Positions 4,348 through 58,452 of a DNA stretch of 64,000 bases are shown piece by piece (within the stretch, counting starts at the first letter, position 1; each line of letters begins with the position of its first letter). The DNA is from Ruditapes philippinarum. Taxonomy: Eukaryota. Position numbers and translations under genes: made by a program. The stretch spans positions 1-64,000 of the forward strand of contig NW_026856785.1 of NCBI RefSeq assembly GCF_026571515.1, in the 5' to 3' direction. The notes beneath the pieces are model-generated. The model was not told where the DNA came from. It did not search any database and worked only from the letters and a program-made list of their open reading frames with translations.

Positions 4348-6184
4348 ATGCTGCTGGGCTTTGGAAATATGAAGACTGCTGTAGCATTGCTGTTTGCTGT
4401 AACAAGCCTAGTGTCAGGCGTTAATGCAAGAGGTAAAAAGATTTATAAAAGCTAAAAATACACTTAGCTCACAGCATTTATAGAAGTGAAAGTTCCAGAA
4501 TGACTTTTCGCTTCAAATTTATGACATTTTTCCTCGTTGGAATGTGTTGAATTATTAAATTTTAGATATTTAGATAATGAGTGCTAAATAAATTACATGC
4601 TAATTATTTATTATGTAAAGTATTAAGTACAATGCATACGATTGATATAAATGCACGATTTTGTTTGTTAATTAATTTGATAAGTTTCCTTGTTGGTATG
4701 TACTCAATTAAGTGTATTTAATGTCAATAATTATTGAGGTCGATGCGGTTGATTTTAAGATTAGTTCTCCAAATTCTATACTGGCGAAGAAAGAACATTA
4801 TGGCTTATTTTTGTTATAATTATTTTAAATAATTGTCAACTGCCCAGCGGTATAGGTAGTAACACATTTTCTAAAATATGTTAAATGTCATACATCTATA
4901 ACAGCTAAAAAATGTTTAAGCTTGCTGCAAAGATGGCTGGATACCTTATCAAGGTCATTGTTACCACATTGGTTATGGGACGGATCTTACATTTTCTGAG
5001 GCACGGGTGAGGCAGACAATGAATATGTTTTTCTAGTATAGATACGACATAATAGTAATAACCTGAATGTACACATACATTTATATATATTGGTACTCAG
5101 ATAATTATTTTATCAACCAACTGTTTTTCCAGGTTAAGTATAATTCATTAGTATTTAGATAATTTTATTTATTTCTGTACGATCAAATGATGTTTCCTGG
5201 TATTTCAGTCGCATAGAAATCTATTCGTCAAAGTTGTTACCAAAAATGGCCAGATTCATTGTATTTTTGAGTTAGAAAAAAAATGAATCCGTCGAACTGA
5301 TTATTAATTATTGAGATACTCTGAAACTGGTAAACGTCTGATAATCTGTCATTATATGTACACCATTTCTTTATTGTTTCATAAAGGCGTACTGTCAACA
5401 TCGTGGTTCTTACCTTGTACGACTTGACACGTTTGCTGAATACACTTTCTTGGCTGGAATTTTAAAGAAAACTAACGGTAAGTGAATATTTTAACAGTTC
5501 CGTTTCTGTTGTATTTTTGTTGAAGATATAATGGTATATACACAGAAAAACGTTTTAGGAGGAATATCGCTATAGGTAAAATGTTTGTTTTGTGATCAAA
5601 ATCATACACGTGTACATACGTTGAATAAATAAAATAGCGAAAAAAATGGATGGATTTCCATCACTATAAATTTACAAAATTAGCATCACATCAATAGTTA
5701 ATGAAAAATTGAAATTGTCCAGTCTAAGAACCTTTTATTGTATGTTTTATCAGTTATTGCTTTAAATGTATTAAGGTTAAAATGAGTATGACAGCATAAA
5801 TGGCTTAATGTCTATTAATCTAGTACAGAAACAATTATTTCATTTACTTGTCAGTATTCATAAAACAGCTTTATTTATTTCTTTTACAAAAAGTAGGTCG
5901 TTGATATTCCTGTCGCTCTCATTCTGTATTAAATATTTTTTCTTGTTTCTTTATAAACAGCTGGACATACGTGGATGGGATTGACCGACATCTCTCATGA
6001 AGGGATCTGGAGATGGTTTGACACAAAAGAGCATGCTACATTCTCTGACTGGGGAGCAGGGGAGCCCAACAATGACAAGGGTGCTGAAGATTGTGTACAC
6101 TTCGGTTATAATCAGAACTACAAGTGGAACGATGTGTCATGCAGTTTTAAATTAAGACCATTGTGCGAAATTGAATTCAGATAA
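4348..6184 (+). CDS. C-type lectin copy 1 (secreted, perlucin-like, EPN/WND), ~161 aa. Coding exons 4348-4432, 4921-5006, 5387-5477, 5961-6184
   Basis: GT-AG splicing gives an open frame: MLLGFGNMKTAVALLFAVTSLVSGVNAR-ACCKDGWIPYQGHCYHIGYGTDLTFSEAR-AYCQHRGSYLVRLDTFAEYTFLAGILKKTN-AGHTWMGLTD...GEPNNDKGAEDC...WNDVSC...LCEIEFR*. Hydrophobic signal peptide and canonical CTLD cysteines. AATAAA at 6201. The second ATG (4369, MKT) is the start conserved across copies. Confidence 0.93.
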
Positions 6185-9100
6185 ATTGCAAACATTAATG
6201 AATAAAATTTGTTATTTGTTTAGTTATTATTCCAAGTGTATATTAACAAAGAACAAAGAACAGACAAGTTCATATTTCACAACAGCAGGTATCGGATGCC
6301 TTGTGGCAGCTGTATAAAGTTGCACATTTCTTCACTTCTTCACTCAAGCGTTTGTTCTGGCCTTTGTGGATCATTGACTCAAGAACATTAAGTATGAAAG
6401 TGGTTCTGCATATTCATATACGTTTATTGATTTATTGCTGCCAAGCGATCTCCGCATTTACAGACAGTATTTATGAAATTTTCAGCTTATAAAAAGAAGC
6501 GTGCCGTCAGCCTCAAAAATTATTACAGAAAATCTACAGTTGTACTATATTTCAAAATCGAAAATTCTCTTTAGAACGTTCATAACACTTGACATGTTTG
6601 CTTCGAAAACAGAATGTCCACTTTTCTGCCATTTGGATGTATATTCTTTTATTATACTACGAATTCTTTATGCGCGTACCGAATCCCGGGAAATTACGCA
6701 TTCAAATCAAACAGTGTATTTCTTCAAACAGCAAATATTCATGAACTTCATCAATGGACATCTTCAAAGTTGAAGCTGAAGCTGAACATTTTGATTCTCT
6801 TTGTCACCACACGCTATGTCGACACTAAATATCATTAATGTTATTCGTTATCGTTTGCAAAATTAAGTCTTTCTGATATTTAACGTCTGTACTTTTAAAC
6901 CATACTTAAGAAGTATTCTGTATTTTTTCTTGATAAAATCATTAACAATATCGCTTTGATCTTTTTGTCTGTATGTTATGTTGACAATCTAAAATTTAGG
7001 TTTTCTCATTTTACTACCAAGTCACCGTATTTTATGGAGAAAAATATTTATTGGGCCATTTCTATTTAACCCCTTTAATACCAAGCAAGTTTGAAGTTCG
7101 TTCTAAAATATATGACCCAACGGAGTCAAATTGTGCGAAAACGAAGTGATCGTGGTTAAACTTTTTCCGGACTGTTAAAGAACTTTATGGACATATACTG
7201 ACGTGTTTGGTCGTGAATATTGCTGCAGAACTTTGAGCCTAGTTATAATATTGGGCGACTATCCCGTTCTCCAATAAGACGAACACCTTACGTACTCTTA
7301 AACTGGATTCATGTATAACGAACGCATTTACAGTACTATGTTGGTACTAGTCACGTGAAATAACGCGATATGGTCGGACAACACTTAGCAGGTAGAGTTT
7401 ATACCGATTTGTCCGTTTATAGCTTGTTCACCCCTTGCACAGTCAGTCTTTGTTTATTGTTGTTTTGTTTTGTCAAATTCTGGAATATTCGAAACTTGTA
7501 GGATATTCATAGGAATGAAACAATTTTTTTATGAAACATATTCATTTATTTATCACATTCATGAGGTGAAGTTGTCGCTGTTTACCAAAGAAGACCTATG
7601 GTCACGCTGGGTATTGACGGAAAAAGCGCAAATGTGACTTTAAATATCTCAAATGACTGAGTTAAAGCGAATACCATTGGTTATGTAGTGTATTATTAAA
7701 ATTAAATTATGCAGCTCATTAATAGATCATTACACGAATTTATACAGAAGTGAGTTAGAAGTTTTGCCTTGTATACAAACTATGTATAAGTATGATGCAT
7801 ACTTGCAACAGACATGGGCATGTAGAAAATGTAATGTTGCAACCTTGTTCTTTAAAATATATAGATCACTTAACATTAATAGTATGTCTTCTAATTGGTT
7901 ATTGACTTTTAATATACAATTATGTTTCAAATTTTTGTATTACAACATATAGAGGAATTTGATGGCAAACAAATCTTGCAATTAATAATATCTCAAGACT
8001 TTTATGAGTTTAAGGCAAAATAAGTAAATCAGATATTAATATAGAAGTAAACTCCAGTTAAAACTGAATACTGTATTATTTTATTCAAAAGTACATTTTT
8101 TCGTCTTAAAAACCTTCAATGAATAGCGAGCGACAGACACAGCTTAAATTGAAGCATATATTTCCGGCGCATTTACTTAAGAAAAAGATCACGTTGTTGT
8201 AGATAGATAGATAGTTTTATTCTGGTAAAAATACATGTCATAAAACAACTACAAATTCAACGCAACATCAAGAGATACATGTAAACATGAAAGTGCATGT
8301 GTTGATGCCATATATTCAATACCAAGGATGACACAAAAAGAAGGCATAAGCCGACTTATTTCCATTGTGGTCCTTATAAAATAACATAATGTATAGACAC
8401 GTTAAAGGGCCCCCATTTAGTGTGATCATGAGGTGTCAGACGACTTATACATGCATATCAGACAGGATTATCTTCTGTATTCACCGGTGTAAGACAAACC
8501 TGTCTCACACCCCCATGTAAGAAAAATAGCGTGGTTTAATTGATGTCTTTCCCGCGCGCCTTTTATAAATGAATTGTGTTCATAAAAAGGCGTCATTTAG
8601 CCATTATGAATAAAGTTGTAAATTGATACGCTTTTATACACAGCCGGTGTAAGAACCGTATATTTCTATCGAACGGATTTGATTAGATGTTTTAAAAAAA
8701 ATCAATTCATTTTATTCACAAAGGCTAAACCATCTTTTGTCATTCTTAGTAACTTTTTTCAAAATGCTTGCAGTTATTTGTCCAGGAGAATCTTTTGTAA
8801 AAAAAAAAACAAAACAACAAATGTTCTATAAAAGACGAGAAATTACCTTTCGCCTAGACTTAGTAAAATTTGTTGTCAGTTTAATGTTGGCCAGACTGTA
8901 GAATATACTTACATGGTTATAGGTGGACCTGGGTTAATCTGTATTATTCATTAACAATCTTGAAACTATGAAATCACCTACCAGCATTTCAAATATTTTC
9001 ATATGTTTATCGCGTCAAATACCAAGAAATGTAAAATGTTACCAGTTAAAACCTTTAGTATCATTGCTTTTGTTTTCATTGGTTAAAATCCGGCTTTACC

Positions 9101-9643
9101 GTGATGTCGGTATCTGTTACTCTTTAAACAATATTTTCATGTTTATTCAGATTGTTATTACCAGATAATCTTCTGTTAATAAGTGAGTTGCATTTGTTTG
9201 GTTGAATATTTGTTATATGGTACATTTGATTAGACTATATGCAGGTTGTTATGAATTTATGTATACTGCTTACAACATATTATAAGAACGTCTAAACGAA
9301 TAAAGAGGCCTCGTTAATTTATTTTCGAAAGGAACTCGCGATCGATTGTTATAGTCTTTCGAAGTTAACAAAACTTTATTTTAACTTGCATAAACATAAT
9401 AAGGAAAATTAAGTTTTCCTGTAAAACATATGACTAGCGAATTTCAAATCTTATTTTAAACCCCCCTTGTTTATTATCGAGCTTCCTCCTTGATACTTAC
9501 TTACGTGATGGACATAGAAACAATATAATCCATGCAAAGATAAGAGAGAGAGAAAAAAAAATCGAAAAAAAAAACAAAAACAAAAAATAAAAAAGGTTAA
9601 AGTAAGGGATAAAGGGAAGTTTTCATTGATAGTATATTTGTTC
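6185..9643 (+). repeat. Duplicate of the copy-5 3' flank and copy-6 upstream region (39169-39520 plus 42872-46229)
   Basis: Colinear matches: GAAAATCTACAGTTGTACTATATTT (6528/42876), GAAGACCTATGGTC (7590/43371), ATAGAGGAATTTGATGGCAAAC (7949/43758), GGTTAAAGTAAGGGATAAA (9595/46185). Confidence 0.9.
8201..8376 (-). mobile_element. 3' tail fragment of a non-LTR retroelement (CR1/L2-like)
   Basis: Absent from the paralogous site at ~44040. The minus strand ends AATAAAA-(CTAT)3, i.e. a polyA signal plus a microsatellite tail. Confidence 0.65.
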
Positions 9644-12600
9644 AAAGAATTGTCTTTGAGTTTTTTTTAATTTGTTCTTACTTTTACAGCAGGTGTCGAG
9701 TGTCTTTGAACAGCTGTAATTTGCTTCACTCTCGCGTTATGTTTTTTTTTCCGGCTCTTCTGGACCATTGATTCTAGCAAATTTAGTGTTATTTTTAGCA
9801 GTGTAGAAAAAGAATTGTCTTTGAGTTATTTTAATTTGTTCTTACTTTTACAGCAATTCCTGAATTGTTCAAGGACATAAAAAAGTTTGTGTTTTTGGAA
9901 CACAGATCCTACCGATAGAAACCCTTATGACCTTGAATCCTTTTTTTCTAAAGATATCAGCGTTTTATTTTGAAACAGATTTAAAGTAAAAAAAAACCGA
10001 CAACAACAAAAGAAAAAAAAGAACAACAGTTAACCAAGCTGACTTATGTTCTGAGACTGTCCTAGCCACATACTATTTTCAATTCTTATTTTAAGCACTA
10101 TCTGCAACAACAATAGTTTAATCAATGTAGGTTTCGACCAAAATAATTGTTGATGAAAATATGTCAAAAAGAAATAACATTTCTTAAAAGCTTTACAATA
10201 AATTTATATTAAAAGGATTTGAACTGAGGTCCATGATTAAAAATGAAACTTAAAAATCCTACATAGACCTAGTAGGGCACTAAAAGCGGAAAGAATATAC
10301 AAAAGATTTATAAACCCAGGTGAATTGAGATTGATACTTAGTGCGATTCTTAGTCCGATTTGAGTTATCTGTAGGTCATTTTGCACTATAAAAATCCAAT
10401 TTTTGTTGAAGAAAAAAACGAAGTGTGCGAATAATGAAATAGAATATTTACACACGTATATTGTATAGAAATGTATCAATAAGTAAGAGTTAAAATTTTG
10501 ATAAACAAAAATCAAGTCTCGGCATGTCAAAGAACATTCTTGGGGGTCGCTTCTTCAGAAAAGACAAATGTGTATTTCATACTGTTTTGAGCATGTTGGA
10601 CACTTATTACCTGAAGAAAGGAAAGTGGCATTGAATGTGAAATAATATCTCATGAAAGTAGCAAAATGTAAACAATGTGATATTTTAACTTCCATATAAA
10701 ATGCTAAATCACTCTGTGTTTAATTACAAGATGGAAATGAAGCTTAAAATTGTCTTGCTATTTGAGCAATAAGAAACTGCAACAGGACAGTAAAAGAGAT
10801 AACTATATCTTGTTTTAGGGCTTAAAGGGCCTTTGAAGAAAATATTAGTTTTGAATAGTCAAAAGATTACAAGTCTGCTGAAGAATATATTGCTAGCCGT
10901 ATAATTCTAAACATTTTCCCTAATGAACAAACTCAATAAAAACCAAGTCTACGATTTTTAACAATTTGTTTTTATTGTCTTGAGGATCTTTCATTTTCTA
11001 AAAATTTACACTCACAATAATGTCGATCTGGCAAATTCCATTTCTGTAAAAAATACAATTTAAAATTACGCCACTTTTTATAATAAGATACTAACATATT
11101 AATAAAGTCGTTTCCACACTTGACAAATGTCTTATTCTTTCAGTTCAGACTATGTTTCTGAAAATTTGGCAAGTGTTTATACCCCATATCCGCCAAAATG
11201 TAACTATCAAGAAAACGATGTACCAAATATCTATTTTCACTAAAGGTTAAAACAGTCGTGTATGCTTACTTTATTGCATACAAAAGCGAATATGTATTTT
11301 GGTTAAATTGACACACATATGTAAATCAATGGGATTCAGGTCTTTAGATTGGAGAAGCTGCCCCATAAAACGAATTTATCACCAACCACACAATTATACG
11401 TAGCGATGTACGTGCAATACTTATGTTCATTTCTTACTTACATAAAACCAGTAAATAAATAAATTGCTCTTGAGGATGCTCAGTTGACGTTGTACAAAAC
11501 CTCGTCTTCGAAACTATTTCATTAACACTGCAGTTTATGATACCTTTATATCAGCTTCTTTCTATTTAAAGACCACATCTCTTGTTTACCTGGTATTCAG
11601 ATAAAGAACGAGCTTCATCCGAAAGAAACATAGCACATAATTTATTAACAGATGTTTATTTAGCTAATTAGCCAATAGCAAAATATTAAGTCCAAGACAA
11701 AATTTATATGGTGCATGGATTCAACATAAAATCAACCCTAGTATTCTATAAACATGCACGAAACAATTATAAGAAGCTTAATTCTAAGGCAAAAATCACC
11801 GTGTCTCCATTTGCAAGAACTATTTCATTGTTTTATAACTTCTAGTGTTTAAGCCTTTCAATGTCTAACAGACTGCCGAACATCGCTATGGCACCTTTCT
11901 TCATTGTAAGTACAGTTCAATTGATGTCATTGTAAGTAAGACTTTGTCATTGTCAGGTGATCTTTTCGACCTTTCGTTGAAATACTAGAGAGTAATATAT
12001 GTTTCTTTGTGTTACTATAGTAGTCACATTTGTTTATGAAGATGGAGGTTTTACACTTAGAATATGCATTTGTTATGTACAAATTGAGAAACTGGAAACG
12101 AAAACTATAATACAAATATACTGTAGTTTAAACATTATCATTTTCTTTTTAGGAAAACAAAACAGAATGATTTGAATGTTTTTAGTTGACTTTACCTACT
12201 TTAATAACAACAATTTATTGTAAGTCAGACAGTTGCAGTATACATTGATTTTATCATGCGACTGATTAATTTACAAAGACTAGTGGATCGGTTCCTGTCT
12301 TTTACTGTTCTATCACTTTTCCGAAAAAAGAATGTATACTCGAAAGTTACCTGAAATGTTCATTTACCAGAGGGGTTAGAATGTCGCCGTATGACTGTTA
12401 CATGTAAATTGATAATAAAATTTAAATGATTGTTTATTTGACTCCGGAGAAAATATTTAACAAACATTATTATTATTATAGCATTCCTTCATTGCCAAGC
12501 TGTTGTCTTTACGTGTTCTTAAATTACGATGTCTAAAAAGGAACGCTTCGTCAATATAATCGGAACCATCTGTTAAAACTATAACAATAATTATTTGTCC

Positions 12601-13260
12601 TCTTGCCCATTCCAAACAAAGATCCTCAGCATAACAAAACAACTTACAAAATTATCTAACATAGAAATCTTAAAAAACACCCCTTTAAACAAATTATTTA
12701 CAGCAACTATTTTCCATGACCAGTACAGAAGCGTTGCGTGACACGTTGTTTGTGTGTGGGGGATTGTCAACTTTTTTGACACCTTTTTGAATGTAAAAAT
12801 ATGTTTCAAACGTGAAAAAGGCATAACAACAGCAAGATCATGTATCACTTGTGATGAGATAGCATTTACAACTAAGAAGAACAAACTACTCCGGTCGTGT
12901 CACTAACTAAATGAGATTGGTAGGATCGGGGAGGAATAAAGAGACAGTGATAAATAGTATACTGTACAGAGCTTGAAATATTATGAATCTTTATTTAAAT
13001 AACAATTCTTTTAAGCCGACAATTATTTGTTTACTTATTTTGATTGTTATTCTTTGAAATTCACTGCCGATGTATTTGATTTGCATTTTTTTATATACGT
13101 ATTATCATTCTTTGACAAAAGAAACTAGTTAATTTATATTTTGTTTTAAAGTTTCCAAATGTACACCGTTATTAAAGTCTTTACGAAAGCAACTATTTAT
13201 ACAATATTGTTATAATTATATAACATATCTAAATAACTATATTTTAAAAAACATATAGAC

Positions 13261-15503
13261 ATGCTGTTGGGCTTTGGAAATATGAAGACCGCTGTAGCAT
13301 TACTGTTTGTCGTTACAAGCCTTCTGCCAGGAATTAATGCAAGAGGTAAAAAGATTTATAGAAGCTTATATTACAATTAGCTTACATCATTTATAGAACG
13401 GAAAATTCCAGAATGACTTTTAGCTTCATATTCATAACGTTTTGCCTCGCTGAAATTTGTAAAACCATTTACTATTAGATAACAAATGCAAACTATATGC
13501 TAAATATTTATAATGTAAATATTAAGTACAATGTATACTATTTACATAAATGCACAAATAGTTTGCTTGTTGGTATTTAAGTTGATTCAATGTTAGTGAT
13601 AAAGGAGGTCGATCTTGTTGATTTTTTATCATAAGTCCTCTAAATTCAATACTGCATAATGGCATATTTTTGTTATGAATATCATTTAAATAACTAGCTA
13701 GTAACACATCATGTAAGATATATCAAATGTCATGCATATATAAAAGCTAAATTTTTTGTTTAAGCTTGCTGCAAAGATGGCTGGATACAATATCAAGGTC
13801 ATTGTTACCATATTGCTTATGGAACGAAACTTACATTTTCTGAGGCACGGGTGAGGCATACAAAAATGTATTTTTTGCTAGTATAGATACGACATATAAG
13901 GATTTAACTGAATGTACACATAAATTGATTATATTTGTATTCAGTTAATAATTAGTTTATCACGTGTTTGTCAAAATATGAAAATTGAATCATTTAAAGC
14001 TGCATGCTTCCAGATGAACAAATTTGAGAAAAAAGTACTAAGATTTGAAGAATAGTAAAATGGTTCAATATTCAAGAAATAATGTACATGTTAAGTGTGA
14101 GTAATGACTGATTTTGCAGTATCTGTCATCATATTTGTACTAGATCTACATGACTAACGAAGAAATGGCTATTTTGCATATTTTTATCTCTTTTGGTTAT
14201 TAAAAAGGATTTTCAGAGCCGTTGTTTTTGTAATGTGTAAATTACTTTCTTATATCACTCTACAATATTTTACTTTTAAATTTTTACTTTGCAAAATTTT
14301 CATGAAAATTACCATCAATCTGGAGGCACTTTGCTTTAACCACCAAAAGGAATTTTCTTGAAATTTTAGTCGTATAGATATCTATTCGACAAATTTAATC
14401 AAAAGTGGCCAGATTTATTTATTGTAAACACTAGTACTATCTGAGACGGTCGAATTGATAAATTCTTTACATGTATATGCTTTACAAGATCCCTGTTTGA
14501 TAAATAAAACTAACAACATCATTATGCTTAAAATGTATTTTTCATACAGACGTACTGTCACAATCGTGGTGCTTACCTTGTACGGTTTGAAAAGTTCGCT
14601 GAATACACTTTCTTTGCAGAAATTCTAAGAAAATCTAACGGTAGTATTCAAGACTTATTTTATTTTTTCCTTTTCTTTTATTCTGTTTGTTGAAGACAGA
14701 ATGACTATGTTAGGCCTATCTCAGAAATGTGTTTAAGGAATCCATCGCTATAGGTAAAATGTTTGTTTAGTAATCAAAATCCTACACGTGTTCATAAATT
14801 GAATAAATGATGATCGTTAAATTTCGATAAAACTGATGACGCATGCGCGAAATCATCACTTTAAACCTACAAATAAATCAGAAATTTTTTTAAGGGAATG
14901 TTTGATTATTTTTTAACAAAATATAATGATAGAAACCCCTTGACTTCTTTTTTAAACGATTTCAAGAAATGATTGACAGAAGAAAAAAAACCTGAAATTG
15001 TACAGTTTATGCTTTATTGTATGATTTGCCAGTTATTGCGTTATGTTTATTAAGGTTTTGGTATTCTATTACTTAGGACTCTTTCTAATTAATATAAAGC
15101 TAACAAAAGTTTCACAATATAAAATAAACAAAAGTTTCATTTACTTTCACAATTATAACATCTTCAGCGTCCTGTTACATAGGGAACTCTATTTTTCTCT
15201 ATTTATTTTACATAGCATAGTTTGTAGATTTTGTTGAAATTAATATTTTGCATAGCAATTATTATTTCTTTTTCTTTATATTTAGCTGAGAATACATGGA
15301 TTGGTTTGACCGACAAGACTCACGAAGGGATCTGGAGATGGTTTGACACAAAAGAGCATGCTACATTCTCTGACTGGGCAGCTGGGGAGCCCAACAATGT
15401 AAATGGCGCTGAAGACTGTGTACACTTTAGTATCTATTGGGACTACAAGTGGAACGATGTGCCATGCAGTTATAAATTGACACCATTGTGCGAAATTGAA
15501 TAA
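13261..15503 (+). CDS. C-type lectin copy 2 (EPN/WND). Coding exons 13261-13345, 13765-13850, 14550-14640, 15286-15503
   Basis: Same exon sizes and phases as copy 1, GT-AG intact, open frame ending WIGLTDK...GEPNNVNGAEDCVHFSIYWDYKWNDVPC...LCEIE*. The stop is two codons earlier than in copy 1. Conserved ATG at 13282. Confidence 0.92.
13998..14335. mobile_element. TTAA-target MITE (Kolobok/piggyBac-type) in intron 2 of copy 2
   Basis: TTAA|AGCTGCATGCTTCCAGAT ... ATCTGGAGGCACTTTGCT|TTAA, imperfect TIR. Confidence 0.75.
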
Positions 15504-18500
15504 AGATAAATTGCAAACATTTATAAGCAATATTTGATTTGTTATTATTTTATGTGTATTTTATTAAAAAGTGACAAATTCAAAACTCACAACAGCAGAT
15601 GTCGAGGGCGGTGTGGCAGCGGTAAAAAATTGCCACGTATTTCACTTCAGTGTTATATTTTTTCTGGTCTTACATGATCATTGATTGTAGCTCATTAATT
15701 GCTATTCTTAACAGTGTAAAAAGGTCTTTGAGTCATTTTTATTTGTACAATTCTGACATGTTCTAGGGCATAAAATAGTTTGTTTTTGGGACAAAGATCC
15801 ACCGATCGAAACTCAAATGGCCCTTAATAATTAACCTTGAAATATGAAGACGGCAACGTTTATTTTAAAACAGATATAAACGAAACAGTTCGTAAACCTT
15901 ACTTATTTTCTGTGACTGTCCTTAACACATAATGTTTTGAATTCTTAATTAAAAGCATTATCTGCAACCATTATAGTTTTTATAAATGTAGGTTTCGACC
16001 AAAATAATTGTTGATGAAAATAAGTCAATTAGAAATAATATTTGTAAAAAGCTTTCGACCGATTTATATTAAAAGCGCTTGACTGAGGACCAAATGCCTA
16101 AACAATGAAACTTGAAAATCTGGCATAGATCTAATTGGGCACTTATGACGGTGAAAAATGCAAATTTAAAGATAAAGATAATAAAGACCTTATATGAAAT
16201 TGAAATCCATATTTATTGCGATCCTTAGCTCGTTTAGAGCTATGGCCTTTAAGTCCTTGTTATGTTTAGATCAATTTGCATAAAATATGCGAATGGGATA
16301 TAATTTTGTACGCAAGGTTTTGGTATAGACATAGATTAAATAGTATTAAAATTTCGAAAGAAAAAATGTTTTGTCCAGTCCCAGCATATCGAAAACTTTT
16401 ATATCATTTGGGCACATATGTATTTTATACTGTTGTAATAATGAATTACAAGCATATTGGATGCTTATTACCTGAAGAAAGTAGCGTTGAATGTGAAATA
16501 ATTTCTCATTTAAAATAGCGAAATGTTAACAACGTGATATTCTTACTTCCATACAAAATGCTAAATCATTTTAACTGTGCTGAATTGCAAAATGCAAATG
16601 AAACTAAATGTTAGCTAGCCATATGGCCAATATGTATCTTTTCGGAAACTGTATCAGGACAACAAAGCAAAGAAGGTTTGGGAAATTAGTACAATTATAT
16701 TTTAGGGCTTAGTGAGAATTTAAAGAAAATATTAAAACTTTTGAATAGTAAGAAGATTACAAGACAAATAAAACGTTTATTGTAAGCCGTATCTTTGTAA
16801 CTTCTGAGATTGTTTGGCGGACATTAAGACTACATGATTAGAGTGTAGTTATTATTTCTTCTAAGGTAATTAGGGATACTTGATTTCAGTACATTTAGTG
16901 TTAAGGTTCTAATACCTCAAGTCGGTGCTAGGGGGTGCACATGATGTTGCATCTTTTATTATCCCTAATGAACACTCATTAAAACCGAGTCTGCGATTTT
17001 CAACAATTTGTTGGTAATTGTCTTTGCTCTTGAGGAATCTCCCATTTTCAAAATATTTACGCTCACAATAATGTCTATCTGGCAACTTTCATTTTTGTAA
17101 TAAATTATAATTCAAAACTATGATGAGATACTTACTTGATAATGTCGTTTATCATACTTGAAAAATGTCTTATAGATAAAGTTCAGATTAAGTTCCTGAC
17201 AATTAATCAAGTGTTTAAATCCCTAACCGCCAAAATGTAACTATCAAGAAAACGATGGACCATATATCCATCTTAACGAAAAGTTAATACAGTCGTGTGT
17301 GCTAACTTAGTTGTATGTCAAAGCGACTGTGTATTTTGTAACATTTAACATACATATGTAAGTCAATAGAATCCAATCCAGACCTGAAGAATGGGTTGGT
17401 CGCTCAATGAAACGAATTTATTACCACCCACGCAATTATAAGTAACGCTAAACGGGGACTGTGCCATCCTGTGGAAACTAAATGCTACTCATGTTCATTA
17501 CTCTCTTGTGTAAAACCAATATATTATTGCTTTTTAGGATGCTAAATTAACAACAACTTTCAATTATTTCAAATACTCGTCTTCGAAACTTGCTCTTTAA
17601 TTAACCTTGCAATAATGAATCCTTGACTTCAGCGTTTTTTCCATGTAAAGCCTGAAATACCTTGTCTTTCTGGAATTCAAATAAAGGACGAGTTTCATTC
17701 CAAAGAAACAATACTCATACGAGTAATTTATATACAGATGTTAAGCCAATTAGGAAACGACATTGTAATTAATCCGAAACTTCAAGTAACAGTATAATTG
17801 ATGTGATGCGTGGATTTCACTTCAAATTAAACCCTAGTATTATATGCACATGCATGACTAAAATTATTGGAAGCATCATTTTTATTTTTTAAAATGACGG
17901 TCTAATACCACCATGTGTCCGATTTGCAACAACTATGTGGTTGTTTTATGTCTTCTAGTGTTTAAGTCTTGCAATGCCTTACAGACTGCCGAATATCACC
18001 ATAGCGTCTTTTTTGCAACATCTATGTCATTGTCAGTAGGACTCTATCATTGCCAGGTGATCTCTTCTATCTTTCGATGAAAAACAAAAGAGTATTATAT
18101 GTGCCTTTGAGCTACTATGGTATATCAAGATGCTTTACCAGACAGAGGTTCTACATTTAGAATATGATTATAAAATCTTAGAAAATGACTGATAGATGAA
18201 TAACAATACAGATGTAGCTTACTTTGAAAGAAAATGATAAAAAATAACATCTGTGTCATCACTTTTATCAGACTGCTCCATGTACCATTGTCTCAATGTT
18301 GAGAAAATCCCAATCAATATTCTTTTTCTAGACCAAAACTTCGAAACAGCCATTTGTTCATTAGAACGTACTGAATATGGACTTTTTTCAATTCTCTCAT
18401 TTGTGTATATATGTTGTGAATTGCAATTAAAACTATCATGTTTTTAGAAAAAAAAATGGACAAATATTACTATAAGAATGACTTAAATGATTTTTTGCTG

Positions 18501-19517
18501 AATTTATCTTCTTTATTAACAACAATTTACTGTAAATTAGATTCTTGCAGAATAAAATGATTTTATCATGCGCGGAAACTATCCGATTAGTTTACAAAGA
18601 TAAGTGGATTTGTTCCTGTCTTTTAAAACCACTCTTCCACTCTTCCAAAATGAAAGCATAGCAAGTCTGTACGTGTATTTAAATGACGATGTCTAAGGAG
18701 TAATGCTTCATAAATTCATTTAATTGGAGTCATCCCAACAATATCCTCACTCTAAACAATATTCTTTGATGTCATTAACGTTAATCAGAACAAAACAACT
18801 TGACGAATTATGTAAAATGTGATCAATTTCTTCAAAATTTTCTTTTTTAAAGTTGCACAATAACTTGGGAAAAAGTATTTTACGCTGTTCATTTTGTTTC
18901 ATTTGTTTCAAACATGCACAAATATGTTCAAAGAAAATAAACTATTCACATGGATCTGTTAAGAAACGTCGCGTGGCATTCTCACTGTGTGTGTGTTTTT
19001 TTGTGGGGGGGGGGGGAGGCAGGGGTCAACTACGTGCAAATCATGGCTATAACAAGACAATAAGAAATCCATTCGTTACTCGTAATGAGATTGCATTTAG
19101 AAATAAGAAGAATATACTAGTCCGGTCGTGTCACTAGCCCAAAGAGGTCGGAAAGAGCGGGAAGGAACAAAGAGACAGTGTTAAAATAGTATACTTTACT
19201 GTGCTTTGTTCGTAAGTTTGATAATTGATATACCATTACATAATTTAATCCAATTTATATTTATCTAACTGAAGTAAATTCGTTACGTAATATTTCTATT
19301 TAGACAACAAGTGGTTCAATTATTTTATTTGGTATTTGGTTGAGATACACAACCACGAGTATTTACACTTAACTATTGCGTATCTAATTTGTAAACAAGC
19401 TACATAATGAAATTGAAATCTTTCCGAAAGCAAAAATTCACAGACAATTGTGATTTAAAGCCTATCCAAGTAATTTTATCATAATAACCTTTAGATAAGT
19501 TTTTGGACTTTGGCAAG

Positions 19518-24100: not shown

Positions 24101-24517
24101 AAACTACCTTTACCAGAGGAGCTGATAAGTCGCCATATGACTGTAACCCTTACACAGTGTTAATAAAATTTAAAATGATTGTTTGTTTGACACTGAAGAA
24201 ATTTTAAAACAAACATAATTATTATGACATTCCTTCATTGCCAAACTGTTGTCTTAACGTGTACTTAAATTGCGATGTCTAAAAATCTGAATAAACTATT
24301 ATTATATTAATTTGCCCTCTAGTCCGTTCCAAACAAAGATCCTTCGCATAACAAAACAACTTACAAAATTATCTTAAATAGAAATCTTAGTAGAATCCTT
24401 TTTGATGTTGCATGACAATTAAACTAAAATAAACAGTTTTTTACGTGTCAAAGAGAGTTCAAACCTGCACAAATCATTTGCCTCGTCAGAATAAAATAAA
24501 TTATTTATAGCAGTTAT

Positions 24518-27500: not shown

Positions 27501-27586
27501 AAACAAAAAACATACTATTTTTTTCCAAGATGGCGGCGTTTGCTTACTTTTTGTAGGATACGACGCAGTTTTGATTCCCAGCCCTG
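24518..27586. mobile_element. Non-autonomous foldback-type DNA transposon (3.07 kb, ~460-bp TIRs, 6-bp TSD)
   Basis: Termini CAGGGCTGG/CCAGCCCTG. TSD AGTTAT at 24512-24517 and 27587-27592, with an empty site at ~3669. Bases 24518-24975 are the reverse complement of 26845-27586, the right arm being interrupted at 27145-27420. No transposase ORF. Confidence 0.9.
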
Positions 27587-46531: not shown

Positions 46532-48438
46532 ATGAAGATCGCTTTTAAATTAGCACTGTCATTAGCCGTAATGGGCCTAGTACCAGAAATCGACGCAGGT
46601 AATGATAATAATAATAATTATTGCAAAATTTGTGGGTTATTGGGTAAATGCGCGTCAGAAATAAAAACGGGTCTAGATTAAGTGTATGGAGAAAATATTT
46701 TCTCCATATCTTACAATTGCCAGGTAGGCGTCAATGTTTAAGGAAGGTAGGACGTCAGCACTGTCAAAGCCAAAGTTGATGAAGATGCAATATTTAACTT
46801 AGGGGAGAGTAATGACATTTTCGGGCTACAGCGCGTCATGTGTGTTTTCCATCTTGAAAGAAAAAATCAAAATAAGATAGAAATTATTTTGATTTCTACC
46901 TTATTTTGATTTCTTCTCTTAATTTACTTGTTGTAATAAGAAAAGTTAAAGTTAAGGAAAATATGCGCCCGTTGAATCCCTCATTTGCTAACCTCTGACC
47001 AGAAAATTGAACGGATTGTAAAAGCCTCGATCTTATTGTCTTGGTTCAAAGATCGAGACCTTAGACGTCTGAGAGAAATTGATTGTAACAGGGCCTGGCA
47101 ATAAACGTTAACCCAGTAACAAAATGTGGGTACATGAAAAAAGCGATCGCGCAATTGTTGCTCGATGTAGCAGGAGCGTTAAAGAGTTATGTACGCTTAC
47201 CTTTTTGACAGTGATGGAATAGTGATATTTTAATGATCAAAAATACCTTGCAACGATATGCTTGTTTTGTATTATAATTAGTTGCTTGCAAATGAAGTAT
47301 TACCTGTGATTCTGATTTCAAAACAATATGTCAATGAGAATTGAATTTCGGAGACCGTTAACTTTTTATGCGTGTTATAGCATTCAAAATCTAAAATACA
47401 TTGTTGAAAACTCCAGGTTGTTGTCAAAACGGCTGGATACAATATGAAGATCATTGCTACTATATCGGTTATGAGACCCGTCTAACATTTGCTGGAGCAT
47501 GGGTATTTACGTACACTTTTAATGAAATTATATACATGAATATACAAATGTCTACGATTTGTCTTCATGAATTTATCATTTTTATATTGTAGTTTTGTCT
47601 TAAAAAAACTTTGGTTAATAATACATTACAATAGATGTTTATTAGTCGGTTGATATAAAATCGCATACTGTAACAAAATCGTCTCTATGAAAAGTGCAAG
47701 CTTGGCCGACGAATATGTCACATTGGACAAATGCCATACTCAAATATATCACATTTATAGTGTTTTTTATAAATTTGTTCACACAATATGCCTTTGATTT
47801 TGTTTTCATACAGCCGTGTTGATGTATTAAATCAATAAAATGATATTATCTCTTAAAAACATGAGCATTTTTACATTTTTGATTAGTTATTCTGCTCCAG
47901 TTATGGTGCTTACCTTGTGCGACTTTACACATTTGCTGAATACGAGTTCTTGAGAGGCTTTTTAAAGAAGACTCAAGGTAACTTTCTCTCAACATCAAAG
48001 TTCTTTTGAACTTATAAGAATTTGTAAATCAGTTAGTAATGTTATCCTACGATGTGAATACCAGTAAGATGCAAACTATTATTTGTAAGAAATGCATGAT
48101 TGCATTGTTTTAAAGTCAAGCATATGCTTCTTATTTCAGTTTGTGTTAAAATTTTCAGACACATTCCCTTAGTGTTTCGTTACCGATTTGACTAAAATGA
48201 AACAATTTTACTTCTAGCAATTACTCCATGGATTGGATTGACTGACAAGGCCTATGAAGGACTATGGAGATGGTATGGCACAGGGACCCACGCTACATTC
48301 TCTGACTGGGGTCCTGGAGAACCCAATAATAATGGCAATGAAGATTGTGTACAATTATATTCAGGCTATGACTACAGGTGGAACGATACGCCATGTCATG
48401 GACAACTTACACCACTGTGTGAAAAAGACTCAATATAA
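46532..48438 (+). CDS. C-type lectin copy 6 (more divergent, EPN/WND). Coding exons 46532-46598, 47417-47502, 47887-47977, 48218-48438
   Basis: MKIAFKLALSLAVMGLVPEIDA-GCCQNGWIQYEDHCYYIGYETRLTFAGAW-LFCSSYGAYLVRLYTFAEYEFLRGFLKKTQ-AITPWIGLTD...GEPNNNGNEDC...WNDTPC...LCEKDSI*. The 86/91-nt exons, intron phases and GT-AG sites are conserved. Confidence 0.9.
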
Positions 48439-50775: not shown

Positions 50776-52427
50776 ATGAAGACTGCAATAGTTTTGCTGC
50801 TTGTCGTTGCCTGCCTGGCGGAAGGAATTAATGGAAAAGGTAAAATAATTTTTTTTATCACTAACGGCATTACTAGTTCATAACAAATCAGCGGAATGAA
50901 AATTCTAAGACGTAGATAAATAAGTTATGATTCCTTCTACAATTGGACAATTTGTCTTCCTAAAATGATACTATTTTTTATGAATTGCATCTTGTTTGTA
51001 TAGTATAATTTTGTAGATATTTGGTATAATTATGTTGAATAGATACTGGTTTTTATGCATGTATATCATTGTCTGTGTAAAGGATGCTGATTTAAATTTT
51101 TAAAAGGTTTTTGTTAAATTTTTAGGGTCGGTCTACAATGCAGGGTGGGGAAAAAATTTTTTTTTTTGTTTAAAACAAACCCCTTTTGGGAAAATATAAG
51201 CGAACCCAAAAGTATATTAAAGCCAAAAACAAATTTATATAAACATTTAAATTTTTTAATTTCGAATTAAATTATGTTTTAAAAAGCCAGGTAGATTAAA
51301 AAATTTTGGAAGTAACTTTTTGCACATTTTTCCCTCTTTTTTTAAAAATAAATTTTTAGCTTTTTCCCGTTGCCCCAGGTTGGATAGCCTATAAAGACCA
51401 TTGTTACCACATTGGTTACGGAAGTCGTTTAACGTTTTCTGCTGCACGGGTATGTAGAAAGTGTGTATGTATAACAAAGAAATGTTCCTATATGGCAAAT
51501 TAATATTTAGCTGTATTTTTATACACAAATATTTACAATCTTATGAATACTAGAAATATTTTATTTTTATTTGGTTTCTGAAATTAGTTACTTCTCTATT
51601 TATTGCATTTTTTGTTATGATATTTCTTTTTTAAAATCTTCTTCACGGTTATTTTGCGTCATGTGTAATTTTGCAGATTGCAGTTCTACATTATAGATGT
51701 TTACTTTGAAAGCTATGTACGTGAAATAGCCTACAATTTAAATGATTGTATAAAGAATTATAGAAACATACCTGAGTTTACAAAGAATATTACAACTTCC
51801 GATTGAAAATGTTTATTTGTATTTTCAGCGGTATTGTCAACGTCTGGGTGCTTACCTTGTTCGGCCTGACACGTTAGATGAAAATACTTTCTTGAACGGA
51901 TTTCTTAAGAAATCTAATGGTGAAAATTATTTTCTTTTCATTTCAAACAATTGTTTAAAGCAAGATTGGATTTATCCAAACAGAACTTGGGAAATATCAA
52001 AGCATATTGAAACGATTGCATTTGAACAACACTTAGGTTACACGGCTTAAGTTTAAGTAAAAACTTTTAGCAATTTTATATTGCTTAACCATACTTCAAT
52101 TTTGTAAAATCAGTATTGTCATACATCATTTTAATTTTCACAAAGTAGGGCATTTGTACATATGGCGTATGTTATAATCAGAAGAATTTTTTGTGAACAT
52201 TTCTAGCTGGAAGTACGTGGATTGGACTGACTGACAAGTCTCAAGACGGAATCTGGAGATGGTATGACACAAAGAGTCTTGCAACATGCTCTTACTGGGC
52301 TCTAGGGGAACCTAACAATTTTGGCAATCGCAATGAAGAGTGCGTTCATTTTGACTACGGTAAAGACTATAAGTGGAATGATAATACTTGTCGTCACATG
52401 TTTACACCTTTGTGCGAAAAAGACTAA
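50776..52427 (+). CDS. C-type lectin copy 7 (EPN/WND). Coding exons 50776-50839, (51360 or 51379)-51449, 51829-51919, 52207-52427
   Basis: MKTAIVLLLVVACLAEGINGK; ...GWIAYKDHCYHIGYGSRLTFSAAR; RYCQRLGAYLVRPD...; AGSTWIGLTDKSQDGIWRW...GEPNNFGNRNEEC...WNDNTC...LCEKD* (this last exon is absent from the ORF track). The AG ending at 51359 is out of frame, while the AG ending at 51378 restores frame. AATAAA at 52523. Confidence 0.78.
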
Positions 52428-55263: not shown

Positions 55264-55347
55264 AATTAATTAATTGATGAATGAATGAATGAATGAATGA
55301 ATGAATGAATGAACGAACGAACGAATTAATTAATTAATTAATTAATT
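55264..55347. repeat. Compound microsatellite (AATT)n-(GAAT)n-(GAAC)3-(AATT)n
   Basis: Seen directly. Confidence 0.9.
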
Positions 55348-57064: not shown

Positions 57065-58452
57065 ATGGACATCGCAATTTATCTAGCCACATTGTTCTCC
57101 CTTGATTTTCCTTATGAGTATGCCAACCAATGGTTGTTGAAAAAATCTAAATGAATGCGTTTATTTGCAAAAACTTTTAACTACATTGCTGCAAAGATGG
57201 ATGGTTTTCATATAGAGGACATTGTTACTTCATCGATTTGGGTATAAAGCTGTCGTTTCCTGCAGCCAGGGTATGTACACACAATCATACAATAGTATGC
57301 ACTTGTTTCGAGCGTTAAATTTTTACGATGAAAGAATTTATTTAAAACAAGATCAGGCAGATATTAAGTTAATGATATTATTTTATGTTTTTTAAACCAA
57401 AAAAAAAAAAATATCTTTAATGGTTCTAAAATCAATGGTTTGGTATATTTTACACTGGTATGAATGTATGCATTTGTATGTATGCGTGCATATGTGTATG
57501 TGTGTGCAAGTGCGCGCGCACGCGCGTTTGTATGTGCGTGTGTGTGCGCGCGCGCAACAACGCATGCGTATGTTTTTACTGATAAAAAGTTATTCTCTAT
57601 TTGTTTATATATATATATATCAGATTTACTGTTTAAATCTTGGGGCAGACCTAGTCCAGCTCGAAACAATTGCTGAAAATAATTTTCTGAAGGGATATCT
57701 AAAGAAAATCGAAGGTAAATCTCTAACATCAACTTGAGTTTATTGCTTATAATGGTCGCATGATAAACATGCGACATCATGAGATAAAATACTATATAAT
57801 ATAAATGATACTGCTCGCTTGTTCGTTTCTGTTATTATTTGTTTCTGTTGTATTATGTAATTATTTTCCGACCTTTTCTCATTTATAATGTGTAACATAT
57901 ATAACACCTCGATATCATAACCGATGGTTTCAAGCATTGCCAATAATTGCTTTAGTATCAAAGATAAAAAAAAGATAAAACTAAACTTTGGCTATTTAAA
58001 AACATCGTTTCACAGAACACATTGTAACAACAGTGAGATACTGAAGATATTGAAGAGCGCTTTCATTTTTTTAATTTCATTATTTTTATTTTATTATAAA
58101 TCTTTATCTTTTATCTTTTATTTATTTATTTATTTATTTTGGGGTGGGGAAGGGTCCGTATCCTTAGTGTCTGAATGGGCGGATTGACTGGACCCTCATT
58201 TAACCAAGAATACGCTTTCATTTTCTAGCAAAACATGCTTGGATTGGCCTAAATGACATGACTCATGAAGGTATATGGCGATGGTACGGCACGAATGAAC
58301 ATGCTACATTCTCTGATTGGACACCTGGACAACCAGACAATGCAATGAACATTGAAGACTGCGTGCACTTTAATCATTATCACTACTTTAAATGGAACGA
58401 TTTCCCGTGCCGAAATTTAGTTGCACCTTTCTGTGAGACAGACCAAATATGA
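57065..58452 (+). pseudogene. C-type lectin copy 8 (QPD/WND, galactose-type), apparently disrupted. Exons ~57065-57132, 57185-57270, 57624-57714, 58229-58452
   Basis: Exons CCKDGWFSYRGHCYFIDLGIKLSFPAAR, IYCLNLGADLVQLETIAENNFLKGYLKKIE and AKHAWIGLNDM...GQPDN...WNDFPC...FCETDQI* are open. The exon-2 acceptor reads AC (57183-57184) with an in-frame TAA just upstream. The signal exon needs one C removed to read MDIAIYLATLFSLIFLMSMPTN. These lesions could be assembly errors. Confidence 0.7.
57459..57572. repeat. Alternating purine-pyrimidine (TG/CG/TA) microsatellite in intron 2 of copy 8
   Basis: Seen directly, e.g. GTGCGTGTGTGTGCGCGCGCGC. Confidence 0.9.

What the first reader, a model, noticed from the sequence alone, without database searches (positions are those of the whole stretch)
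5961..58452. Lectin repertoire with constant framework and CDR-like hypervariable loops
Seen: a 55-nt block (5999-6053) is identical, silent sites included, in copies 1, 2 and 4 and differs by 2 nt in copy 5. About 50 nt downstream, the 5-residue loop between CVHF and YKWND differs completely in every copy: GYNQN (6104-6118), SIYWD (15429-15443), NGGKD, QNSQG (30460-30474), SPGRG (39088-39102), YSGYD, DYGKD, NHYHY. Residues flanking GEPNN also vary (GA/AA/AD/GK before, DK/VN/KN/AH after). Established: EPN and WND form the Ca2+ site-2 sugar pocket of CTLDs, and these loops surround it. Inference: a germline-diversified recognition system under diversifying selection, with the framework homogenised by recent duplication or gene conversion.
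Basis: partly seen in the sequence, partly recalled or inferred. Interest (0 to 1): 0.78.

Follow-up and report, generated by a model that had tools for sequence, protein, structure and literature searches.

The report
Clam lectin gene array, fast-evolving loops
This is a tandem cluster of small secreted sugar-binding (C-type lectin) genes of the Manila clam in which the calcium and sugar pocket is kept constant while a few residues around it change faster than neutral DNA, a clean but not unprecedented example of how an invertebrate widens its recognition repertoire in the germline.

Summary
The window (Ruditapes philippinarum, contig C5272) carries eight same-strand copies of a four-exon gene for a roughly 155-aa secreted single-CTLD lectin. 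Four are intact (c1, c2, c4, c5) and c6 is probably intact. c3 is a pseudogene, and c7 and c8 are doubtful at the 5' end. The 55-nt block is identical in c1, c2 and c4 and differs at 2 nt in c5. No two loops are alike.

Codon site models on exon 4 reject neutrality: M1a/M2a LRT 22.3 (21 sequences) and 31.1 (7 close paralogs); M7/M8 LRT 20.0. The selected sites are the middle of the five-residue beta3-beta4 hairpin, the residue after EPNN, and two others. In ten independent pairs, loop pN is 0.50 against exon pS 0.30. Loop nucleotide divergence exceeds intron divergence in all six pairs among the intact copies.

Segment trees conflict at 100% bootstrap, so paralogs have recombined or converted. 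The silent identity of the 55-nt block is not significant on its own.

RNA contigs show c1 spliced as modelled, with the germline loop. Nothing points to a somatic or dedicated diversifying mechanism.

This is an ordinary birth-and-death immune-type gene family under diversifying selection. I found no description of it for bivalve C-type lectins.

The parts
4348..6184 (+). c1: intact four-exon lectin gene (database protein P0151, 161 aa). Exons 4369(or ATG 4348)-4432, 4921-5006, 5387-5477, 5961-6184.
   Evidence: Exon peptides and GT/AG sites. P0151 matches the model residue for residue. RNA contigs of run X5 show the three introns as GT..AG joints.
5999..6053 (+). 55-nt block identical in c1, c2 and c4; 2 mismatches in c5
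   Evidence: Block pS 0.037 against 0.231 in the rest of the framework.
6104..6118 (+). c1 hypervariable loop GYNQN (residues 136-140 of P0151), at the tip of the beta3-beta4 hairpin
   Evidence: strands 132-136 and 142-146.
6074..6076 (+). c1 codon D126, first residue after EPNN; selected among the close paralogs
   Evidence: alignment column 35, posterior 0.97.
13282..15503 (+). c2: intact gene. Exons 13282-13345, 13765-13850, 14550-14640, 15286-15503 (stop two codons earlier than in c1). Loop SIYWD at 15429-15443.
19518..21141 (+). c3: pseudogene. Exon 1 and exon 3 remnants; no exon 2 found. The exon 4 remnant has an in-frame stop, a deletion in the GIWRWFD stretch, and W-to-S and C-to-F changes. 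Loop NGGKD at 21064-21078.
28249..30540 (+). c4: intact gene (P0152, 154 aa). Exons 28249-28312, 28752-28837, 29610-29700, 30317-30540. Loop QNSQG at 30460-30474.
37094..39168 (+). c5: intact gene (P0154, 158 aa, which starts at an ATG upstream of 37094). Exons 37094-37154, 37603-37688, 38347-38437, 38945-39168. Loop SPGRG at 39088-39102.
46532..48438 (+). c6: probably intact, more distant copy. Exons 46532-46598, 47417-47502, 47887-47977, 48218-48438. Loop YSGYD at 48358-48372.
   Evidence: The N-terminus matches that of P0163, the near-identical gene on C11887.
50776..52427 (+). c7: doubtful copy. Exon 1 50776-50839. Exon 2 stays in frame only from an acceptor at 51377-51378 and then lacks the N-terminal Cys-Cys. 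Exons 51829-51919 and 52207-52427. Loop DYGKD at 52353-52367.
   Evidence: The database model P0162 is N-terminally short.
57185..58452 (+). c8: QPD-type copy with an unresolved 5' end. There is no AG acceptor before exon 2 and no signal-peptide exon was found. Exons ~57185-57270, 57624-57714, 58229-58452. Loop NHYHY at 58372-58386.
   Evidence: The database model P0164 is marked partial.
1..39524 (+). Five tandem duplication units of about 5.7-9.3 kb (c1 to c5), similar in introns and intergenic DNA as well as exons
   Evidence: Self-BLAST, for example 1-1226 against 10064-11257 (88%) and 21620-22812 (93%), and 2358-5114 against 35086-37798 (77%).

Best explanation
The window holds part of a lineage-specific tandem array of genes for small secreted mannose-type (EPN/WND) C-type lectins of the Manila clam. 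The array grows and decays by birth and death: unequal crossing-over adds units and some copies break. Purifying selection holds the fold, the cysteines and the Ca2+ site-2 ligands (E122, N124, E130, N144, D145 in P0151 numbering). Positive diversifying selection acts on a handful of residues around that site: the tip of the beta3-beta4 hairpin (136-139), the residue after EPNN (126), and probably 98 and 152. Each copy would therefore keep the same primary monosaccharide grip but present a different extended glycan-binding surface. Occasional exchange between paralogs (gene conversion or recombination) keeps parts of the framework and 3' end similar. Exchanges that would erase the loop differences are not seen, presumably because they are selected against or are quickly overwritten. 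Shown here: gene structure, tandem array, expression and splicing of c1, omega above 1 at loop sites, and mosaic histories. Inferred: sugar binding, differing specificities, and a role in recognising microbes or particles.
For: Family and fold. Pfam Lectin_C scores E 3.4e-13 on exon 4 alone. The AlphaFold model of P0151 has pLDDT 94-99 across the domain. Its best structural matches are solved lectin domains: codakine (TM 0.91, rmsd 1.6), DC-SIGN, CEL-I and mincle.

Gene models. GT/AG sites are canonical, the models agree with database proteins, and RNA contigs show spliced joints.

Selection. See; numbers are in the report. My M0 likelihood equals IQ-TREE's (-2587.65), which validates the code. 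Exons 2+3 evolve at dN/dS 0.29-0.58 with dS 0.22-0.40.

Birth and death. There are five tandem units, a pseudogene c3, damaged c7 and c8, and partial exon 1-2 duplicates on C11887.

Exchange between copies. Splits that cannot both be true each have 100% bootstrap. c1 and c5 have framework dS 0.064 in exon 4 and 91-96% identity in the first ~200 nt of the 3' flank, but dS 0.24 in exons 2+3 and 63% identity in intron 3.

Structural role of the hairpin. In the clam lectin codakine, Trp108 lies between the beta3 cysteine (103) and the WND Asn112. It stacks on a GlcNAc of the bound N-glycan and forms an extended site (review PMC12842671, passages).
Against: No binding, specificity or immune function was tested.

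The likelihood-ratio tests assume one tree per alignment, and recombination, which I show exists, is known to inflate them. The tree-free pair count and the c1/c5 contrast reduce this concern but do not remove it. Branch lengths were fixed to M0 values up to one scale factor, and posteriors are naive empirical Bayes, which is optimistic for small data sets.

Two of ten independent pairs do not show loop pN above pS: c6 against its C11887 twin (0 against 0.025) and the 71k/103k pair (0.17 against 0.24).

I could not obtain model coordinates, so distances of the selected residues from the Ca2+ site rest on sequence and secondary-structure position and on recalled structures, not on measurement.

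Expression was shown only for c1. One raw RNA run (X21) had almost no reads on it (14 laid).
Confidence: 0.75

Rival explanations
1. The loops are simply unconstrained. They drift neutrally, and the contrast with the framework reflects purifying selection on the framework alone.
For: The beta3-beta4 stretch is variable across C-type lectin domains in general: the consensus of 89 diverse domains has no majority residue there. The loop codons were chosen after seeing the data.
Against: M1a already contains a neutral class and is rejected in favour of M2a (LRT 22.3, 31.1 and 27.2). M8a is rejected as well (LRT 11.6). Loop pN of 0.50 exceeds exon pS of 0.30. Loop nucleotide divergence of 40-73% exceeds intron divergence of 17-44% in all six pairs among c1, c2, c4 and c5. 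Loop length is fixed at five residues in all 21 sequences, so misalignment is not an issue.
Confidence: 0.08
2. The loops are old rather than fast. Repeated gene conversion homogenises the framework and resets its silent divergence, while the loop patches escape and keep an ancient divergence. The excess would then be diversity-preserving selection against conversion, not accelerated substitution.
For: Mosaic histories. Exon-4 framework dS is lower than in exons 2+3 for c1-c5 (0.064 against 0.24) and for c2-c4 (0.11 against 0.27). Block pS is 0.037. Apparent pS is also raised in the loops (0.39). The run test finds longer concordant stretches than permuted sites in 5 of 10 pairs at p < 0.05; 2 survive correction for ten tests.
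Against: Loop divergence exceeds that of the introns, which should be the oldest unconverted DNA. The c1/c5 contrast would need at least three separate short tracts that end exactly at the loops. The dS differences rest on 2-8 silent changes and are not individually significant. The runs are only 20-30 bp long and lie in noisy intron alignment.
Confidence: 0.3
3. A dedicated or somatic diversifying mechanism, such as targeted hypermutation or templated micro-conversion from donor fragments (as in chicken Ig or snail FREPs), creates the loop variation.
For: The differences are sharply localised. The same fold serves as the variable scaffold in bacterial diversity-generating retroelements (recalled, not tested).
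Against: A 178-nt RNA contig of run X5 spans the loop (6024-6201) with 0 differences from the genome. Local tblastn found no orphan exon-4 donor fragments in the window beyond the eight copies. There is no ORF of 150 aa or more in the 64 kb, so no enzyme or retroelement is encoded nearby. Every loop is encoded in the germline.
Confidence: 0.03
4. The function is not immune. The lectins sort food particles in mucus, or act in shell formation as the 'perlucin-like' label suggests, and the selection comes from algal or matrix glycans.
For: Mucosal C-type lectins of mussels and oysters are reported to take part in particle capture and to be induced by starvation (review PMC12842671, passages). NCBI names most members 'perlucin-like'.
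Against: The name rests on about 31% identity to abalone perlucin (P0197). A 'perlucin-like protein' rises 8- to 39-fold in Manila clam haemocytes after Vibrio challenge (PMC4234419, passages), although its identity with this cluster is unknown. Diversifying selection of this strength is more typical of host-parasite conflict (general knowledge).
Confidence: 0.25

Closest known systems
Expanded bivalve C-type lectin repertoires (Saco et al. 2023, PMC10140915; review PMC12842671)
   Same: Secreted single-domain lectins with a signal peptide, in lineage-specific expansions. Relatives occur only in close species: the nearest outside Ruditapes are Mercenaria proteins at 45-56% identity.
   Different: Those papers place the diversity in gene number, domain architecture and variants of the EPN/QPD and WND motifs. 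In the passages returned, the first has no occurrence of 'loop' or 'EPN'. The second has none of 'positive selection', 'hypervariab', 'diversifying', 'gene conversion' or 'tandem dupl'. Here the motifs are constant and the variation sits beside them. Supplementary files were not seen.
Codakine, the mannose-type lectin of the clam Codakia orbicularis (PDB 2VUV/2VUZ)
   Same: Best structural match by target TM-score (0.91, rmsd 1.6, 30% identity), with EPN and WND. A residue of the same beta3-beta4 hairpin (Trp108) forms its extended glycan site.
   Different: Codakine is a single characterised protein and a disulfide-linked dimer that lacks Ca2+ site 1. No paralog array or selection analysis is reported in the passages I read.
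Mincle, DC-SIGN and mannose-binding protein (vertebrate EPN lectins)
   Same: Same fold and the same Ca2+ site-2 ligands. The hairpin is about as long as mincle's in the alignment. The residue after EPNN corresponds to His189 of rat MBP-A, which touches the sugar (recalled).
   Different: 28-33% identity. Those are membrane receptors or collectins with necks. These clam proteins are bare secreted domains.
Fast-evolving vertebrate lectin-fold families (snake-venom C-type lectins, NK receptors Ly49/NKG2)
   Different: Most of those have lost Ca2+ and sugar binding and bind proteins. Here the sugar-site ligands are all kept.
C1q-domain gene array of the same clam genome (earlier scan note s1-793112)
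   Same: Tandem array, one scaffold, variation concentrated in loops, and many broken copies.
   Different: A different fold and family. I did not examine that locus.
Somatically diversified receptors (antibody CDRs, lamprey VLRs, snail FREPs)
   Same: Constant framework with variable binding loops.
   Different: No rearrangement, donor cassettes or somatic variants were seen. The diversity is one fixed loop per germline gene.

Membership tests
C-type lectin-like domain (Pfam PF00059), Ca2+-dependent sugar-binding subgroup | Significant match to the family profile | tested here: met
   Exon 4 alone scores E 3.4e-13, 50.7 bits against a cut-off of 22.6. PF00059 is precomputed for P0151-P0166.
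C-type lectin-like domain (Pfam PF00059), Ca2+-dependent sugar-binding subgroup | Double-loop fold with two helices and two sheets | tested here: met
   Model with mean pLDDT 89.0 and 94-99 within the domain. All top Foldseek hits are solved lectin domains, E about 1e-12, TM 0.77-0.91. A first model from 14 sequences was poor in the long loop (pLDDT below 50).
C-type lectin-like domain (Pfam PF00059), Ca2+-dependent sugar-binding subgroup | Conserved cysteines and the WIGL-type motif | tested here: met
   C42, C132, C148 and C156 are invariant. C30, C31 and C60 are present in at least 90% of sequences. W92 and L95 are invariant and G94 is nearly so, within WxGL.
C-type lectin-like domain (Pfam PF00059), Ca2+-dependent sugar-binding subgroup | Ca2+ site-2 ligands: EPN or QPD, a Glu before the beta3 Cys, and WND | tested here: met
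   E122-P123-N124, E130 and N144-D145 are invariant or nearly so in 14 family members. c8 and some relatives have QPD.
C-type lectin-like domain (Pfam PF00059), Ca2+-dependent sugar-binding subgroup | Ca2+-dependent carbohydrate binding | not testable with these tools
   Needs recombinant protein.
Perlucin (abalone nacre protein), the name given by NCBI | Orthology to Haliotis perlucin and a role in CaCO3 nucleation | tested here: not met
   Only 31% identity to Haliotis 'perlucin 4' (P0197), no closer than to fish or mammalian lectins in the same list. The name is a similarity label. The function was not tested.
Multigene family evolving by birth and death under diversifying selection | Tandem duplicates that include pseudogenes | tested here: met
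Multigene family evolving by birth and death under diversifying selection | Omega above 1 at a minority of sites, with the rest constrained | tested here: met
Gene conversion between paralogs | Significantly conflicting trees or tracts along the gene | tested here: met
   Incompatible splits, each at 100% bootstrap. This cannot be told apart from unequal crossing-over that joined units of different ancestry.
Gene conversion between paralogs | Silent divergence lowered inside the tract | tested here: inconclusive
   The direction is as expected, but the counts are 2-8 silent changes and the 55-nt block was chosen after the fact.
Somatically diversified immune receptors | Transcripts that differ from the germline in the variable loops | tested here: not met
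   An X5 RNA contig over 6024-6201 has 0 differences. This is weak evidence: contigs drop rare variants and the run is from another sample.

The most novel reading that the evidence does not exclude
The two contigs C5272 and C11887 may be alternative haplotypes of one locus. One carries c1 to c5 and the other only a c1-like gene with different loop residues. Individual clams would then differ in both the number and the loop sequences of these lectins, and exchange between paralogs would reshuffle frameworks around protected loop patches. That would be an individually variable, germline 'loop cassette' repertoire, closer to an MHC-like or pan-genome immune locus than to a fixed gene family.
Probability: 0.12. 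Interest if true: 0.75.

Novelty: new member of a known kind. Interest (0 to 1): 0.45.

Why it matters
Bivalves have hundreds of C-type lectin genes (at least 535 candidate exon-4 matches in this genome). The accessible literature explains their diversity by gene number and by variants of the EPN and WND motifs. This cluster shows a second route: the motifs stay fixed and selection acts on the few residues that shape the extended glycan site. It also names those residues, which are directly testable. Swapping five residues between c1, c2, c4 and c5 should swap glycan fine specificity. The Manila clam is a major aquaculture species troubled by Perkinsus and Vibrio, so copy-specific ligands would be of practical interest. 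The phenomenon itself, positive selection on the binding loops of duplicated immune-type receptors, is well known, so a specialist would be interested rather than surprised.

Tried and rejected
The whole-library phmmer search with exon 4 gave nothing useful. The best 150 of 10,346 hits were long multi-domain proteins whose summed scores hid the close relatives.

The first structure prediction, from 14 close sequences, was unusable in the long-loop region (pLDDT below 50 at residues 98-128). A second alignment of 89 sequences fixed this. Model coordinates are not exposed to scripts, so I could not measure distances from the selected residues to the Ca2+ site.

The Sawyer-type run test on the whole-gene alignment gave some low p-values, but the runs are 20-30 bp long and lie in poorly aligned intron. 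I give it little weight and rely on the segment trees instead.

I considered the 55-nt block as proof of conversion and rejected that as too strong (and my rough estimate).

I considered whether C11887 is a haplotig of C5272. Collinear blocks are only 86-91% identical, whereas another individual's DNA contigs differ from the window by about 3-5% in introns (records 13-20).

Raw RNA run X21 laid only 14 reads, some of them in introns, so it says nothing about expression level. X6 behaves like low-depth DNA.

Literature searches found no paper that reports site-level positive selection, hypervariable loops or gene conversion in bivalve C-type lectins. This holds only for the open library searched and without supplements. 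Zhang et al. 2015 (PMC4346834, passages) applied PAML to oyster TLRs, not to lectins.

The scan's own notes for this place were empty.
Full report
WHAT IS THERE. The window is the first 64 kb of contig C5272 of a 1.41-Gb AT-rich animal genome. Names attached to proteins encoded on this contig identify it as the Manila clam, Ruditapes philippinarum.

A motif scan of the six frames finds eight exon-sized reading frames on the + strand with (E/Q)P(N/D) ... WND. Local tblastn with the four exon peptides of copy 1, kept separate, together with inspection of splice sites, gives a four-exon gene. The exons are: signal peptide; CCxDGW...SEAR; AYC...KKTN; and a 73-codon last exon with the whole long-loop region. 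Intron phases are 1, 0 and 1.

Database proteins P0151 (c1), P0152 (c4) and P0154 (c5) agree with these models residue for residue. I did not build or search a joined spliced model myself. Searches with window sequence were made exon by exon, and full-length work used those database entries.

c1, c2, c4 and c5 are intact. c6 is probably intact. c3 is a pseudogene: no exon 2, an in-frame stop, a deletion, and lost Trp and Cys. c7 keeps its frame only from a downstream acceptor and then lacks the N-terminal Cys-Cys. c8 (QPD type) has no AG acceptor before exon 2 and no signal-peptide exon was found.

Self-BLAST shows that c1 to c5 sit in five tandem units of about 5.7-9.3 kb. The units are similar in introns and spacers too, at 65-93% identity. 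There is no ORF of 150 aa or more anywhere in the window.

THE OBSERVATION. An alignment of exon 4 of c1, c2, c4, c5 and two close relatives on contig C11887 shows differences piled up in three patches, with almost none between them. No two loops are identical. Several pairs share one to three positions, so 'differs completely' is a little too strong.

IS IT SELECTION? Among six close paralogs, Nei-Gojobori counts were as follows (15 pairs):
- Framework dS 0.04-0.35.
- Framework dN 0.04-0.15.
- 3-11 of 15 loop nucleotides different.

Those codons were chosen after looking at the data, so I also fitted codon site models to exon 4 with my own implementation. Its M0 likelihood equals IQ-TREE's (-2587.65).

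| Data set | Test | LRT | p | Result |
|---|---|---|---|---|
| 21 family members, 68 codons | M1a vs M2a | 22.3 | 1.4e-5 | omega 4.7 for 4.6% of sites |
| 21 family members | M7 vs M8 | 20.0 | 4.4e-5 | omega 3.7 |
| 21 family members | M8a vs M8 | 11.6 | 3.3e-4 | |
| 17 sequences (four doubtful dropped) | M1a vs M2a | 27.2 | 1.2e-6 | same three sites |
| 7 closest paralogs | M1a vs M2a | 31.1 | 1.8e-7 | omega 6.2 for 17% of sites |

In the 21-sequence set the sites with posterior 0.98 or more are the second, third and fourth loop residues (Y137, N138 and Q139 of P0151). The four sequences dropped for the 17-sequence run were the C2831 copy with an odd tree position, the C11887 copy with W-to-S, c7 and c8.

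In the seven closest paralogs the sites with posterior 0.95 or more are I98, D126 (first residue after EPNN), G136, Y137, N138, Q139 and L152. The residues before EPNN reach only 0.60.

A tree-free check used ten non-overlapping pairs. It gives loop pN 0.50 (61.2/122.3), pN elsewhere 0.106, and exon pS 0.296 (106.2/359.0); Fisher p is 6.7e-5. Eight of the ten pairs show loop pN above pS. The exceptions are a nearly identical pair and the 71k/103k pair.

Exons 2+3 behave ordinarily, with dS 0.22-0.40 and dN/dS 0.29-0.58. Loop nucleotide divergence of 40-73% exceeds intron divergence of 17-44% in all six pairs among c1, c2, c4 and c5.

Caveats: recombination inflates these tests, branch lengths were fixed up to one scale factor, and the posteriors are naive empirical Bayes.

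FRAMEWORK: DUPLICATION, CONVERSION, OR CONSTRAINT? Trees for consecutive segments of the gene conflict. Introns 2-3 support {c2,c4,c5} at 100% bootstrap. The 3' flank supports {c2,c3,c4} at 100%, which places c5 with c1.

c1 and c5 differ by dS 0.064 in the exon-4 framework. They are 91-96% identical over the first ~200 nt downstream. Yet they show dS 0.24 in exons 2+3 and only 63% identity in intron 3. Within that shared tract, 15 of 27 loop nucleotides differ against 25 of 244 elsewhere.

Copies have therefore exchanged sequence, by conversion or by unequal crossing-over, and the loops stand out as holes in the shared tract.

The 55-nt block has pS 0.037 against 0.231 in the rest of the framework. 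It was picked after the fact and is rich in Trp and two-fold codons, so I treat its silent identity as suggestive only.

WIDER FAMILY. At least 535 exon-4-like candidates exist in the genome; the 150 that were scored all had E at or below 0.001. About 21 belong to this subfamily, on C5272, C11887, C13750, C13169 and C2831.

C11887:46191-55026 is collinear with window 2995-6582 plus 42873-48510 at 86-91% identity. It carries a c1-like gene directly beside a c6-like gene, without c2 to c5. That c1-like gene has exons 2 and 3 identical in protein to c1 and eight amino-acid changes in exon 4.

Outside Ruditapes, the nearest proteins are from Mercenaria at 45-56% identity, with equally varied loops.

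STRUCTURE. With an 89-sequence alignment, AlphaFold gives a confident lectin-domain model, with pLDDT 94-99 in the domain. The five variable residues are the turn between strands 132-136 and 142-146.

Foldseek's best matches are solved sugar-binding lectin domains: codakine (TM 0.91), DC-SIGN, CEL-I, MGL and mincle. In codakine, a residue of the same hairpin (Trp108, between Cys103 and Asn112) stacks on a GlcNAc of the bound glycan and creates an extended site (review PMC12842671, passages). From memory, the residue after EPNN corresponds to His189 of rat mannose-binding protein A, which contacts the sugar. I could not measure distances in the model.

EXPRESSION. Run X5 is coded 'organism B' and has an RNA-like depth profile, with exons at 30-220 and introns near 0. 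Its contigs carry joints 4430>4919, 5005>5386 and 5476>5960 with GT..AG ends, exactly the predicted introns. One of its contigs covers 6024-6201 with no difference from the genome.

DNA contigs of another individual (X8) differ by about 3-5% in the introns. Record 19 carries all eight of its differences in the intron part of 5812-6023 and none in the exon part. Only 40 of 106 difference rows were shown, so polymorphism within the loop remains unknown.

COMPARISON AND NOVELTY. The expansion of bivalve C-type lectins is known (PMC10140915: abstract, outline and passages). The recent review attributes their diversity to motif variants (PMC12842671, passages). Neither mentions positive selection, hypervariable loops or conversion in the passages returned. 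Seven full-text searches found no such report for bivalve C-type lectins. Supplements were closed.

The kind of system is familiar: a tandem receptor family under birth and death with positive selection on the binding loops. I therefore rate this a new member of a known kind, of moderate interest. It is well supported statistically and is directly testable by loop swaps.

Noticed in passing
L031-L032 (G000:C11887:46191-55026) against window 2995-6582 and 42873-48510: A collinear segment, 86-91% identical, has a c1-like gene directly next to a c6-like gene and lacks c2 to c5. It is either a paralogous segment or a very divergent haplotype with presence/absence of four lectin genes.
   Followed up: partly
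window 51360-51449 (c7) and 57170-57270 (c8): c7 exon 2 is in frame only from an acceptor at 51377-51378 and then lacks the two N-terminal cysteines. c8 has no AG where the other copies have their exon-2 acceptor, and no signal-peptide exon was found.
   Followed up: partly
protein P0158 (UniProt A0A6B9L4F4, 'C-type lectin', 184 aa): It matches the genomic gene product P0157 closely up to EPNN and then continues in unrelated sequence without WND or the last cysteines. It looks like a frameshifted cDNA entry.
   Followed up: no
L039 1200-1709 and 4025-4535, minus strand (G000:C11887, about 121.2-124.5 kb): Two partial duplicates hold exons 1 and 2. Exons 3 and 4 follow the first copy at L039 382-465 and L038 9470-9685, but none follow the second. 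They are debris of the same array.
   Followed up: no
window 4389-5995, run X5: One 312-nt RNA contig joins 4389>4919 with 38 foreign letters between, and 5007>5995 with non-canonical ends, and has 6 mismatches in exon 2. It is most likely a transcript of another paralog, or a chimeric assembly, laid partly on c1.
   Followed up: no
run X5: The run that best shows spliced c1 transcripts carries a different organism code (B) from the source and the other runs (A). This may be a synonym or a labelling difference.
   Followed up: no
window 7158-9500 against 42937-46110: The spacer after c1 resembles the spacer after c5 (72-82%). This fits the idea that c2 to c5 arose inside an older c1-c6 interval.
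   Followed up: partly
L031 295-2679 (G000:C11887, about 40.3-42.7 kb): Upstream of the c1-like gene lies a QPD-type copy with a stop in exon 3 and a split exon-4 match: another pseudogene.
   Followed up: no
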